Shown here piece after piece: positions 18,925-22,100 of a stretch of DNA of 64,000 nt. The stretch spans positions 124,001 to 188,000 of the forward strand of contig NIVC01000597.1 of assembly GCA_002269645.1 (NCBI GenBank), read 5' to 3'. The notes beneath the pieces are model-generated. The model saw nothing but the letters and a program-made list of their open reading frames with translations, searched no databases and had not been told where the DNA came from. This DNA is from Macrostomum lignano. Taxonomy: Eukaryota. Position 1 is the first letter of the stretch, and the number at the start of each line of letters is the position of its first letter. Both the position numbers and the translations under genes were made by a program.

Positions 18925-19180
18925 CACCCTCCTAACAATTAGCAACCATAAACACCCTCCTAACAATTAGCAACCATAAACACCCTCCTAACAATTAGCA
19001 ACCATAAACACCCTCCTAACAATTAGCAACCATAAACACCCTCCTAACAATTAGCAACCATAAACACCCTCCTAACAATTAGCAACCATAAACACCCTCC
19101 TAACAATTAGCAACCATAAACACCCTCCTACCAATTAGCAACCATAAACACCCTCCTAACAATTAGCAACCATAAACACC
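18925..19180. repeat. 28-bp minisatellite (aattagcaaccataaacaccctcctaac)n overlapping the TLR stop codon
   Basis: Tandem repetition; last TLR codons GGT GTT TAT GGT TGC TAA are part of the unit. Confidence 0.95.
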
Positions 19181-22100
19181 ATCAGCAGGCAGCCCCGCCC
19201 CTGGCCTGTACAGCACAATGTCCAACCAATCATCGCTGATCTCCACGCCCTCCTCTGCGTACCAAAAATTATGCGCCAAAAACTCCGTCGCCGACTCAGC
19301 GTCCGGTCCGTCAGCGAGCCGCCTCAGCCGACGCCGCTCCCGGCCGTCAAGCCGGCCGACACCGGCAAGCACCACCCGACGCTTGAACCGCCGGCCGCCC
19401 AGCAGCAGCAGCTCCAATTCGGCCAGCAGGTCCGGCCGGTCCGCTCGGAGCCAGACTAACAACGAGTCGGTTGCTATGACAACAACTTGACGATAGCGAC
19501 GGAGCAGCTGTCGGGGCGAGGCGGCGTTCAAATCGACGATTTGCCAGCCGGTTGGCGCCGATGCGGAGCTGCGCGCGTTGATCGCCGGCCGCGTGTCCGA
19601 CGACAGTCGGCCGGACAGTCGTCGAACGGCCGCCGTCGTCTCCGGACAGTCGCCGCCGGGCCAGCAGAGGACAAATATGTCGGCGCAGTCGGGATCAGGC
19701 GACCGGAATGTTGGCCAGCTGTGGCCACCTGCTGGGGACATTGGGGGATGAAGAGGTTGAAGGACAGACCCGGGGCAGCCCTAACCACAGAGACTAGGTT
19801 CTAGTTGTCCCCTGGGGCAGGCATTGGAGGACAAGCATTGGAGGACAGACAATAGAAGACATACAATAGAAGACATACAATAGAGGGCAGACATTGGAGG
19901 ACAGACAACAGAAGACAGACAATAGAAGACAGACATTGGAGGACAGACAGTAGAAGACAGACATTGGAAGACAGACAATGGAAGACAGACATTGGAGGAC
20001 AGACAGTAGAAGACAGACATTGGAAGGCAGACAGCAGAAGACAGACATTGGAAGGCAAAAATAGAAGACAGACATTGAAAGACAGACAATAGAAGACAGG
20101 CATTGAAGACAGGACAGACACAATTGGGACAGAAACTGACGGGCAGACGAACTCACCGTCATCCTCGGACGGCAGATCAAACGCGGCCGCCCGCTCCTCC
20201 GTCCGCGGCAACAGCTGCAGTCCAAGGCTTTGGCAGGCCAGTCGCAGCAGGCCGCCCCTGGGACGCAAAATCTCGGACACCAGCGAGTGCCGCCAGTCGC
20301 CGCCGGACCAGCCGGCCAGCCGCTTCAATCCGGGCTCGGTCGCCGCCTCGGTGCCGCCACCGGACAAGCAGATGTAGAAGAACGGAAGCGAATGACGTCG
20401 CCGAATGAGCCGCCGCAGTTCGTCGTGCTGCTCCGTCCAGAATGCCTCGGACAGCAGGATGACGACGCAGTGGCTCAGCCGGACGCCTTCGACCGGCGAG
20501 TCGGCGAGGGCGACGCCGTCTGGCAGCGGCTGGGAGGGCGGGCCGCCATCGCAGTGGACGCAGATGTCGACGGGGTCATCTCGAAGCTGGGCGAAGGCCG
20601 AATGCAGAACGGCGGCCACTTCAACCAGACGGTCCTGATCAGCGGCCAGCGACCACAGAAAGACGTCGAAACTGCGGGTTGAGATTTTAACAAAGTATCT
20701 ATCTATCTATCTATCTATCTATCCATCTATCTATCTATCTATCTATCTATCTATCTATCTATCTATCTATCTATCTATCTATCTATCTATCTATCTATCT
20801 ATCTATCTATCTATCTATCTATCTATCTATCTATCTATCTATCTATCTATCTATCTATCTATCTATCTATCTATCTATCTATCTATCTATCTATCTATCT
20901 ATCTATCTATCTATCTATCTATCTATCTATCTATCTATCTATCTATCTATCTATCTATCTATCTATCTATCTATCTATCTATCTATCTATCTATCTATCT
21001 ATCTATCTATCTATCTATCTATCTATCTATCTATCTATCTATCTATCTATCTATCTATCTATCTATCTATCTATCTATCTATCTATCTATCTATCTATCT
21101 ATCTATCTATCTATCTATCTATCTATCTATCTATCTATCTATCTATCTATCTATCTATCTATCTATCTATCTATCTATCTATCTATCTATCTATCTATCT
21201 ATCTATCTATCTATCTATCTATCTATCTATCTATAGCCAGGACCTGCACCGGAGCGGTTACGAAAATTAGATTTCTCGGTAGTTGCACGTACTCTTTTGC
21301 ACTACTTGAGTAGTCTGATTTTCGTTCGGCATGGCTGGTTCCAGCAGGTAGTTCCTCTGGATAAAAGCGCTTACCGCGCCCATTGGCTTTCCAGCTGCCT
21401 TAATCGTTTCCGGTGATCTTGTGTGCGTGCTTTCAGCTTGATTGGCTGCGGCAAGCAAGCTCGAAAGAGCTCGCTTCGCTCGCTCTTTCTCGCTATCTAC
21501 TATCTATAGCCAGGACCTGCACCGGAGCGGTTACGAAAATTAGATTTCTCGGTAGTTGCACGTACTCTTTTGCACTACTTGAGTAGTCTGATTTTCGTTC
21601 GGCATGGCTGGTTCCAGCAGGTAGTTCCTCTGGATAAAAGCGCTTACCGCGCCCATTGGCTTTCCAGCTGCCTTAATCGTTTCCGGTGATCTTGTGTGCG
21701 TGCTTTCAGCTTGATTGGCTGCGGCAAGCAAGCTCGAAAGAGCTCGCTTCGCTCGCTCTTTCTCGCTATCTACTATCTATAGCCAGGACCTGCACCGGAG
21801 CGGTTACGAAAATTAGATTTCTCGGTAGTTGCACGTACTCTTTTGCACTACTTGAGTAGTCTGATTTTCGTTCGGCATGGCTGGTTCCAGCAGGTAGTTC
21901 CTCTGGATAAAAGCGCTTACCGCGCCCATTGGCTTTCCAGCTGCCTTAATCGTTTCCGGTGATCTTGTGTGCGTGCTTTCAGCTTGATTGGCTGCGGCAA
22001 GCAAGCTCGAAAGAGCTCGCTTCGCTCGCTCTTTCTCGCTATCTACTATCTATAGCCAGGACCTGCACCGGAGCGGTTACGAAAATTAGATTTCTCGGTA

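What the first reader, a model, noticed from the sequence alone, without database searches (positions are those of the whole stretch)
19163..20671. Twin, degenerate TIR-like domains in the receptor tail
Seen: exon 5 encodes FDVFLWS...[10 protein letters not shown]...[13 protein letters not shown], in TIR betaA/BB-loop/betaC order. Exon 6 encodes a second similar-sized alpha/beta unit, ADIFVLCW...[13 protein letters not shown]...RRVVLAGV...FWY. Known: most TLRs carry one TIR; twin-TIR TLRs are a minority described in some lophotrochozoans. The canonical RDxxPG BB-loop is not retained here. Inference: signalling may be MyD88-independent, self-scaffolded by the tandem TIRs, or inhibitory. The second TIR call is weaker than the first.
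Basis: partly seen in the sequence, partly recalled or inferred. Interest (0 to 1): 0.75.

Follow-up and report, generated by a model that had tools for sequence, protein, structure and literature searches.

The report
Toll receptor: one degenerate TIR, orphan tail
The region encodes the cytoplasmic tail of a Toll-type immune receptor: its first half is a real but badly eroded TIR signalling domain, and its second half is a protein-coding extension with no detectable relatives that could not be shown to be a second TIR.

Summary
The coordinates are the last two exons of a six-exon, minus-strand gene. It has canonical GT-AG splice sites, is in frame throughout and encodes 1317 aa. The protein is a P-type Toll-like receptor: signal peptide, LRRs, internal LRRCT-LRRNT cysteine clusters, transmembrane helix, then a tail of about 390 aa.

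- **Exon 5 (20157-20671)** is a genuine but very degenerate TIR domain. It starts 32 residues after the membrane. MAFFT places it unaided on the TIR domains of 10 Toll/TLR proteins. It beats every control against a TIR profile (hhalign 29.2 versus 12.5±2.2 for shuffles). It scores only 13 bits in Pfam TIR_2 (cut-off 28). Box 2 reads CDGGPP and the box 3 FW is lost.
- **Exon 6 (19163-19731)** is coding by codon statistics, but nothing supports a second TIR. There is no Pfam hit, no hit among 1.84 billion protein representatives, and no similarity to exon 5. Its TIR-profile scores are ordinary for natural proteins. The AlphaFold model was unusable (pLDDT 38).

The most likely reading is a single eroded TIR plus a lineage-specific C-terminal extension. 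That arrangement is already known in the Drosophila Toll family and in SIGIRR. "Twin TIR" is neither shown nor excluded.

The parts
26722..28077 (-). Exon 1 (aa 1-452): start codon, signal peptide (aa 1-26, 28000-28077), N-terminal ectodomain, first recognisable LRRs
   Evidence: ATG and GT donor read. Pfam LRR_4/LRR_8/LRR_1 hits only from about aa 373.
25816..26477 (-). Exon 2: LRRs and the first LRRCT-like cysteine cluster (RTPVCDC...FLC)
   Evidence: Pfam LRR_8 E=2.2e-12. AG/GT junctions and phase checked. Aligns to the Caligus Toll ectodomain.
24709..25098 (-). Exon 3: internal LRRNT-like cysteine cluster ([19 protein letters not shown]...LLCRS) and further LRRs
   Evidence: Pfam LRR_8 E=3.9e-5. 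The BLASTP alignment aa 336-810 to Caligus Toll P0001, E=5e-24, spans the cysteine clusters.
23582..24043 (-). Exon 4: membrane-proximal LRRCT (NPWRCSCD), transmembrane helix (aa 905-925, 23677-23739), Arg/Leu-rich juxtamembrane stretch
   Evidence: Sequence read; coordinates.
20263..20670 (-). Degenerate TIR domain core (aa 958-1093, exon 5): box 1 FDVFLWS (20650-20670), box 2 [10 protein letters not shown] (20536-20565), betaC-alphaC [20 protein letters not shown] (20416-20475), beta[11 protein letters not shown] (20359-20388), box 3 position [12 protein letters not shown] (20263-20298)
   Evidence: MAFFT alignment A1. hhalign E=3.4e-4 and shuffle controls. hmmsearch controls. Model-global score. 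Pfam TIR_2 12.8-13.4 bits. AF2 pLDDT 72.5. Foldseek TIR hits.
20157..20262 (-). End of exon 5: 35-aa linker after the TIR core ([35 protein letters not shown]), then the GT donor at 20156
   Evidence: pLDDT below 60 in the AF2 model.
19732..20156 (-). Intron 5, mostly a 14/28-bp minisatellite (19818-20112). It stays open in the exon 5 frame down to 19801.
   Evidence: Tandem Repeats Finder. ORF 19801..20619. GC 0.475 versus 0.65-0.68 in the flanking exons.
19163..19731 (-).
   Evidence: In-frame NAGNAG acceptor. Codon log-odds +29.8 bits in the model frame versus -35 and -57 in the other forward frames, 0 of 1000 shuffles. No homologues. No Pfam/PADLOC/NCBIfam/PDB match. AF2 pLDDT 38.5.
18870..19180 (-). 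3' end: a 28-bp x 9.7 minisatellite (18909-19180) whose first unit supplies the last five codons and the TAA stop; AATAAA signal at 18870-18875 (minus strand), 293 nt past the stop

Best explanation
The region is the 3' end of an intact gene for a P-type (multiple-cysteine-cluster) Toll-like receptor.

Exon 5 encodes the receptor's single TIR domain, which is very eroded. The fold-defining hydrophobic strands and box 1 are kept. Box 2 has become CDGGPP, alphaC is shortened by 2-6 residues, and the box 3 FW is lost.

Exon 6 encodes a translated C-terminal extension of about 190 aa that is restricted to this lineage. Its sequence shows no relationship to TIR.

Inferred mechanism (not shown here). 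Ligand binding to the LRR ectodomain brings two tails together. The eroded TIR still provides a TIR-TIR contact surface, but its coupling to a MyD88-type adaptor is altered or weakened. The extension acts as a regulatory or docking tail, as in the Drosophila Toll family, SIGIRR and IL-1RAPL, and not as a second signalling TIR.
For: - **Gene model.** Six exons, all GT-AG, phases match, 1317 aa, no internal stop.
- **Toll architecture.** LRR Pfam hits. The ectodomain aligns to the Caligus rogercresseyi Toll across the internal cysteine clusters (E=5e-24). The transmembrane helix is aa 905-925 and box 1 starts at aa 958.
- **Exon 5 is a TIR.** MAFFT places it unaided on the TIR domains of 10 proteins, in register from box 1 to box 3. 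hhalign scores 29.2, E=3.4e-4, with 0 of 110 shuffles reaching it. hmmsearch is reached by 0 of 2000 shuffles and 0 of 664 natural windows. The model-global score is exceeded by 1 of 664 natural windows. The only Pfam family of known function that it touches is TIR_2. The AF2 model has pLDDT 72.5 and pTM 0.70 with beta-alpha alternation. TcpB and MAL TIR structures are among the top Foldseek hits.
- **The TIR is degenerate.** It scores 13 bits, against 30-50 bits for the copepod Toll TIRs.
- **Exon 6 is coding.** The model frame scores +29.8 bits, every other frame is negative, and 0 of 1000 shuffles reach it.
- **Exon 6 is not detectably a TIR.**
- **Precedent.** TIR followed by a C-terminal extension is a known arrangement. 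In SIGIRR, TIR substitutions go with a regulatory role (PMC3705552).
Against: - There is no transcript evidence for the exon 5-exon 6 junction.
- No orthologue was found, so conservation of either exon is unknown.
- The exon 5 AF2 model was made with a shallow alignment of TIR proteins, so it leans towards a TIR fold. Its Foldseek matches are weak (E about 2e-3, TM 0.4-0.64) and mixed with Rossmann-fold enzymes.
- Exon 6 has a beta-alpha-like hydrophobic pattern with TIR-like spacing. IFVLCW to VVVIAT is 64 residues, and VVVIAT to FW is about 70.
- If exon 5 is already barely detectable, a still more eroded second TIR would escape every test used here.
- The mechanism is inferred entirely from what is known of the family.
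Confidence: 0.6

Rival explanations
1. True twin-TIR receptor: exon 6 is a second TIR domain, diverged beyond sequence recognition, tandem to the first as in mollusc twin-TIR Tolls.
For: Exon 6 is similar in size to exon 5. Hydrophobic strand-like and amphipathic helix-like segments alternate. The low-confidence AF2 model shows H28-40, H72-78, E83-86, E91-94, H100-114, H129-140 and H144-154. There is a weak local hmmsearch match of TGWQIVDL...VVVIAT to TIR alphaC-betaD, reached by 1 of 2000 shuffles. Twin-TIR P-type Tolls exist in oyster and in Hyriopsis HcToll-2 (PMC5845394, PMC8181103).
Against: No Pfam TIR, TIR_2, SEFIR or TIR-like hit even at E<=10. The hhalign score is within the shuffle range (11 of 110 reach it). 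The model-global fit is average for natural proteins (250 of 664 exceed it). There is no similarity to exon 5. Known twin-TIR receptors have two profile-detectable TIRs. The closest relatives here are single-TIR arthropod Tolls.
Confidence: 0.13
2. Exon 6 is not part of the mature protein. The transcript would end differently, for example by retaining intron 5, whose minisatellite stays open in the exon 5 frame for about 119 more codons. The long ORF at 19163-19741 would then be a by-product of GC-rich sequence.
For: There are no transcript data. The read-through ORF runs to 19801. GC-rich DNA carries long ORFs in several frames here. The first 75 or so codons of exon 6 have weak codon-usage scores. 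The stop codon lies in a minisatellite.
Against: The acceptor is in the right phase for exon 5. Only the model frame of exon 6 has a positive codon log-odds (+29.8 bits; five other frames negative; 0 of 1000 shuffles). GC jumps from 0.475 in the intron to 0.65. The codon-position GC order GC3>GC1>GC2 matches that of exons 1, 3 and 4. An AATAAA follows the stop by 293 nt.
Confidence: 0.1
3. The gene is a decaying or non-signalling Toll paralogue, either a decoy or on its way to becoming a pseudogene. The tail would then be drifting and neither half would have a specific signalling function.
For: Exon 5 scores far below the nearest relatives' TIRs (13 versus 30-50 bits). Boxes 2 and 3 are altered. 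The first 350 or so ectodomain residues have no recognisable LRRs. No orthologue closer than 27% identity was found.
Against: All six exons are open with canonical splice sites over 3954 nt. The codon-usage signal is strong in exon 5 and positive in exon 6. Hydrophobic core positions of the TIR are kept. Lack of orthologues may simply reflect a poorly sampled lineage.
Confidence: 0.15

Closest known systems
Arthropod P-type Toll receptors of the Toll-6/7/8 (Tollo) kind; the nearest detectable are Caligus rogercresseyi Toll (P0001) and Lepeophtheirus salmonis Tollo (P0024)
   Same: Signal peptide; LRR blocks separated by LRRCT-LRRNT cysteine clusters; membrane-proximal LRRCT; single transmembrane helix; TIR about 30 residues after the membrane. 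Exon 5 aligns best to their TIRs, including a long BB-loop region as in P0002 and P0019.
   Different: Only 21-27% identity in the ectodomain. Its TIR scores 13 bits in Pfam against 30-50 bits for theirs. Box 2 is CDGGPP instead of (Y/Q/H)RD(L/F)P/H. FW of box 3 is replaced by LV. The post-TIR tail shares no sequence with theirs.
Twin-TIR Toll-like receptors of bivalves (oyster loci; Hyriopsis cumingii HcToll-2)
   Same: P-type ectodomain and a cytoplasmic region long enough for two domains (PMC5845394, PMC8181103).
   Different: Those receptors have two TIR domains that are each recognised by standard profiles. Here the second unit matches no TIR profile and does not resemble the first. The relatives here are arthropod, not mollusc.
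TIR8/SIGIRR, IL-1RAcPb, TIGIRR/IL-1RAPL and Drosophila Toll-family tails (TIR followed by a C-terminal extension)
   Same: A transmembrane receptor whose TIR is followed by an extension of about 100 aa or more. In SIGIRR, substitutions at conserved TIR positions go with non-canonical, inhibitory behaviour (PMC3705552).
   Different: The vertebrate members have Ig, not LRR, ectodomains. Their TIRs are well conserved. No sequence similarity to the extension here was found. A regulatory role here is an inference only.

Membership tests
TIR domain (Pfam PF01582 / PF13676) - exon 5 | Scores above the curated profile threshold | tested here: not met
   TIR_2 12.8-13.4 bits, E 0.11-0.17, cut-off 28; PF01582 not reported. 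Copepod Toll TIRs score 29.6-49.7 bits.
TIR domain - exon 5 | Significant similarity to TIR sequences in the right register (boxes 1-3 in order) | tested here: met
   MAFFT A1 in register. hhalign E=3.4e-4 local and 1e-4 global, with 0 of 110 shuffles reaching it. 0 of 664 natural windows reach the local score and 1 of 664 the model-global score.
TIR domain - exon 5 | Box 1 (F/Y)D(A/V)F(I/V)SY at the start, about 20-35 residues after the transmembrane helix | tested here: met
   FDVFLWS at aa 958, with the transmembrane helix ending at aa 925.
TIR domain - exon 5 | Box 2 / BB loop RDxxPG | tested here: not met
   Reads CDGGPP. Asp and Pro are present; Arg and Gly are lost.
TIR domain - exon 5 | Box 3 FW in the last helix | tested here: not met
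   The aligned position reads LV (SLVSEILR versus FWxxLR). Only L135 and R136 are kept. A DW lies five residues upstream.
TIR domain - exon 5 | Five-stranded parallel beta-sheet flavodoxin-like fold | tested here: inconclusive
   The AF2 model built with a TIR alignment has pLDDT 72.5 (80-90 over residues 1-100) and elements betaA-alphaA-betaB-alphaB-betaC-alphaC-betaD. Foldseek hits 4c7m, 2ndh and 2y92 (TIRs) have E of about 2e-3 to 8e-3 and TM 0.39-0.64, mixed with Rossmann enzymes. The alignment biases the model towards TIR.
TIR domain - exon 5 | Catalytic Glu of NADase TIRs (alphaC) | tested here: inconclusive
   MAFFT aligns E80 (WTE) with the conserved Glu of EWSxxE. hhalign places the gap differently. 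E84 (DEL) is an alternative. Activity is not testable here.
TIR domain - exon 6 (the proposed second TIR) | Any profile or pairwise similarity to TIR above chance | tested here: not met
   Pfam none at E<=10. hhalign 16.0, reached by 11 of 110 shuffles. hmmsearch 3.2 bits, reached by 13 of 664 natural windows. Model-global score exceeded by 250 of 664 natural windows. PDB phmmer gives no TIR. No similarity to exon 5.
TIR domain - exon 6 | TIR/flavodoxin-like fold | tested here: inconclusive
   Single-sequence AF2 gives pLDDT 38.5. Foldseek finds nothing. No homologues exist to build an alignment.
P-type (multiple cysteine cluster) Toll-like receptor | Signal peptide, LRR ectodomain with an internal LRRCT-LRRNT pair, membrane-proximal LRRCT, one transmembrane helix, cytoplasmic TIR | tested here: met
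   Pfam LRR hits. Cysteine clusters read and aligned to Caligus Toll. Transmembrane helix. TIR as above (degenerate).
Twin-TIR Toll-like receptor | Two tandem domains, each recognisable as TIR | tested here: not met
   Only the first unit shows TIR similarity. The second fails every test listed above.

The most novel reading that the evidence does not exclude
Exon 6 encodes a second TIR (or other flavodoxin-like signalling module) diverged beyond sequence recognition. This would be a twin-TIR Toll receptor in an arthropod-like lineage, outside the molluscs where such receptors are known, with both TIRs having lost the canonical adaptor-binding motifs.
Probability: 0.12. Interest if true: 0.55.

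Novelty: new member of a known kind. Interest (0 to 1): 0.3.

Why it matters
If the single-TIR reading holds, this is one more fast-evolving Toll paralogue. It is useful mainly as an annotation warning: its TIR falls well below Pfam thresholds, so automated pipelines would call it an LRR protein without a signalling domain.

The orphan 190-aa extension is a candidate lineage-specific regulatory tail.

Only if that extension proved to be a second TIR would it extend the twin-TIR architecture beyond molluscs. That would raise the question of how tandem, motif-less TIRs signal.

Tried and rejected
- **Homologue searches for the tail.**
  - Word-seeded search with exons 5+6: no hit.
  - Exhaustive phmmer of exon 6 against 1.84 billion representatives: 0 hits.
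  - Metagenome scans with exon 6 and exon 5: nothing.
  - Exact look-ups of the exon 6 ORF and the retrotransposon ORF: not on record.
- **Full-length search.** Only distant LRR/Toll proteins came back, and no alignment reached the tail.
- **Third protein search.** Querying with a Toll TIR returned only 6 short TIR proteins, so the TIR profile stayed shallow at 10 sequences.
- **Other libraries.** PADLOC and NCBIfam gave nothing relevant. PDB phmmer gave only chance hits, a phage gp15 fragment and PNPase.
- **Spliced tail.** Each exon was therefore treated separately.
- **Exon 6 structure.** Single-sequence AF2 was too poor to use (pLDDT 38.5) and its Foldseek search was empty.
- **Recent internal duplication (exon 5 versus exon 6).** Rejected: best BLASTP E=0.13, out of register.
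- **Paralogue within the window.** Rejected: tblastn finds only the gene itself.
- **Failed run.** One hmmsearch call silently failed and re-read old output. Those numbers were discarded and the search was redone.
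Full report
**What is at the coordinates.** Region 19163-20671 lies on the minus strand of a eukaryotic gene. The quoted peptides are all present. [17 protein letters not shown] and [13 protein letters not shown] are in the translation of 20155-20673. [29 protein letters not shown] and FWY are in the translation of 19163-19741. Reading the upstream sequence and checking junctions by script gives this six-exon model:

| Exon | Window coordinates (minus strand) |
|---|---|
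| 1 | 28077-26722 |
| 2 | 26477-25816 |
| 3 | 25098-24709 |
| 4 | 24043-23582 |
| 5 | 20671-20157 |
| 6 | 19731-19163 |

Every intron is GT-AG, the phases match, and the 3954-nt coding sequence has no internal stop. It encodes 1317 aa. Exons are 63-68% GC and introns 24-49% GC. The introns are filled with micro- and minisatellites.

**What the gene is.**
- The product has a signal peptide.
- Pfam detects LRRs from about aa 373 onwards.
- An internal LRRCT-like cluster (RTPVCDC...FLC) is followed by an LRRNT-like cluster ([19 protein letters not shown]...LLCRS).
- A membrane-proximal LRRCT (NPWRCSCD) precedes a transmembrane helix at aa 905-925.
- The best database relatives are arthropod Toll-family receptors. 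The top one is the Toll of the copepod Caligus rogercresseyi: 27% identity, E=5e-24 in pairwise BLASTP, across aa 336-810 including both cysteine clusters.
- None of these alignments enters the cytoplasmic tail.
- No close orthologue is in the databases, and there is no paralogue in the window.

This is therefore a highly diverged P-type (multiple-cysteine-cluster) Toll-like receptor, probably from an arthropod-like lineage. The organism itself was not identified.

**Exon 5 is a degenerate TIR domain.** Box 1 (FDVFLWS) begins 32 residues after the transmembrane helix, the usual position.

Alignment evidence:
- MAFFT was given exon 5 together with ten Toll/TLR proteins, half of them full length. 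It placed exon 5 on their TIR domains from box 1 to box 3 at 15-26% identity.
- [10 protein letters not shown] lies opposite LCLHYRDLP, and [12 protein letters not shown] lies opposite SRRVILVLSRNF.
- W78 lies opposite the conserved Trp of EWS, and EILR lies opposite the LR of FWxxLR.

Scores against a profile of those ten TIRs:
- hhalign gives a local score of 29.2 (E=3.4e-4 for the single comparison), versus 12.5±2.2 for shuffles; 0 of 110 reach it.
- hmmsearch gives 6.2 bits, reached by 0 of 2000 shuffles and 0 of 664 natural non-TIR windows of 188 aa.
- A model-global Viterbi score written for this purpose gives -11.0 bits, versus -37.4±5.6 for shuffles; 1 of 664 natural windows exceeds it.

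Pfam's only hit to a family of known function is TIR_2, at 12.8-13.4 bits (E 0.11-0.17). That is far below the 28-bit gathering score. The E-value is for 24,736 models, and TIR was the family expected in advance at this position.

Structure prediction used that shallow TIR alignment. AlphaFold2 gives mean pLDDT 72.5 and pTM 0.70, with residues 1-100 at 80-90. The element order is betaA-alphaA-betaB-alphaB-betaC-alphaC-betaD. Foldseek against the PDB puts TcpB/BtpA TIR (4c7m) first and MAL/TIRAP TIR (2ndh, 2y92) among the top 30. E-values are only about 2e-3 to 8e-3, TM-scores are 0.39-0.64, and Rossmann-fold NAD(P) enzymes are interleaved. Because the alignment consisted of TIR proteins, the model leans towards that fold. 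It counts only as compatibility, not as proof.

**How degenerate it is.**
- The TIRs of the two copepod Tolls score 29.6-49.7 bits in Pfam; exon 5 scores 13.
- Box 2 reads C-D-G-G-P-P. The Asp and a Pro of RDxxPG remain; the Arg and Gly do not.
- alphaC is 2-6 residues shorter than in the relatives. Because of this, it is ambiguous whether E80 or E84 corresponds to the conserved or catalytic Glu.
- The FW of box 3 is replaced by LV.

**Exon 6 is coding but is not detectably a TIR.** The acceptor (a NAGNAG, cag|cag) is in the right phase for exon 5. An in-frame versus out-of-frame codon log-odds was trained on 1955 codons from this window. It gives +29.8 bits for the model frame. The other forward frames score -35 and -57, the three reverse frames are negative, and 0 of 1000 nucleotide shuffles reach the observed value. 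The signal is weak over roughly codons 30-75 and stronger from codon 90 onwards. An AATAAA lies 293 nt after the stop. Exon 6 is thus very probably translated, although no transcript data were available.

Tests of its identity:

| Test | Result |
|---|---|
| Pfam, E<=10, whole and in fragments | no family |
| PADLOC, NCBIfam | nothing relevant |
| PDB sequences | only chance PNPase matches |
| Word-seeded search of 5.8 billion proteins | nothing |
| Exhaustive phmmer over 1.84 billion representatives | 0 hits at E<=0.001 |
| Metagenome scan | nothing |
| BLASTP against exon 5 | best E=0.13, out of register |
| hhalign against the TIR profile | 16.0; 11 of 110 shuffles reach it |
| hmmsearch against the TIR profile | 3.2 bits |
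| Same hmmsearch score in natural windows | reached by 13 of 664 |
| Model-global TIR score | -27.3 bits; 250 of 664 natural windows exceed it |
| Single-sequence AlphaFold2 | pLDDT 38.5 |
| Foldseek on that model | nothing |

With no homologues, the model is uninformative and not negative.

What remains in favour of a folded alpha/beta unit is the alternation of hydrophobic strand-like and amphipathic helix-like segments. Their spacing resembles that of a TIR, but the model-global score shows this is not unusual for natural proteins.

**Most likely explanation.** The gene encodes a Toll-type receptor with one eroded TIR and a lineage-specific C-terminal extension. [quoted passage not shown] In SIGIRR, substitutions at conserved TIR positions accompany a regulatory, inhibitory role (PMC3705552). 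By analogy, I infer three steps:
- Ligand-driven dimerisation brings two tails together.
- The eroded TIR provides TIR-TIR contacts, but with altered adaptor coupling.
- The extension acts as a regulatory or docking tail.

None of these steps is shown here.

The rival readings, with my confidence in each, are:
- A true twin TIR (about 0.13).
- An incorrect last exon (about 0.1).
- A drifting, non-signalling paralogue (about 0.15).

Twin-TIR P-type Tolls are documented in oyster and in Hyriopsis cumingii (PMC5845394, PMC8181103). In those receptors both TIRs are recognisable, and the relatives of this gene are arthropod single-TIR Tolls.

**Verdict.** The first TIR is supported and is markedly degenerate. 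The second TIR is unsupported but not excluded. This is a new, very divergent member of a known receptor family and is of moderate-to-low interest. The interest would rise only if a structure or an orthologue profile showed that exon 6 is a TIR.

Noticed in passing
window 7521-11528 (+): One uninterrupted 1335-aa ORF of a Ty3/gypsy-type LTR retrotransposon. It carries a PNMA-like gag region, aspartyl protease, reverse transcriptase, RNase H, an integrase zinc-binding domain and the integrase core (Pfam E down to 1e-30). It looks potentially intact.
   Followed up: partly
window 18909-19180: A 28-bp minisatellite (9.7 copies, 98% matches) starts inside the coding sequence. Its first unit supplies the last five codons and the TAA stop of the receptor gene.
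   Followed up: partly
window 19801-20156 (intron 5): The 14/28-bp minisatellite that fills intron 5 has no stop in the exon 5 frame. Intron retention would therefore replace exon 6 with a Cys/Leu/Ser-rich tail of about 119 aa (ORF 19801..20619).
   Followed up: no
window 20696-22827 (intron 4): (TATC)x135 begins 25 nt upstream of the exon 5 acceptor. It is followed by a 273-bp unit repeated 4.1 times at 99% identity, with each copy carrying the same 63-aa and 57-aa ORFs. Further (CTAT)n and (CTGT)n arrays follow.
   Followed up: no
window 26722-28077 (exon 1, aa 27-370): The N-terminal 350 or so residues of the ectodomain are Ala/Leu/Ser-rich and Cys-containing, and have no Pfam-detectable LRR. 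The ectodomain seems as eroded as the TIR.
   Followed up: no
window 49343-49819 (-), 54135-55285 (-), 62000-62284 (-): Exons of neighbouring genes: PIG-P (GPI-anchor biosynthesis, E=3e-19), an alpha/beta-hydrolase (BD-FAE/Abhydrolase_3, formamidase-like) and LIN37 (E=3e-9).
   Followed up: partly
window 36454-43403 (-): Several long minus-strand ORFs have good coding appearance but no Pfam hit (36454-36966, 39293-39664, 42081-42662, 43104-43403). They are probably exons of one large uncharacterised gene.
   Followed up: no
window 31144-32770 (+), 37007-38391, 39626-40944, 44529-45548: Long ORFs that are merely translated mini- or microsatellites (MELRGR/KKLRDR repeats, CSCT repeats, GDMGSEGG repeats, poly-Ser/Leu/Tyr/Thr). 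These are artefacts of repeat DNA, not genes.
   Followed up: no
P0024 (Lepeophtheirus salmonis Tollo): The database's precomputed Pfam list for this copepod Tollo lacks a TIR entry, although its TIR region scores 29.6 bits (PF01582) when scanned alone. Only the first half of its TIR matches the profile, so copepod Toll TIRs may be generally divergent.
   Followed up: partly
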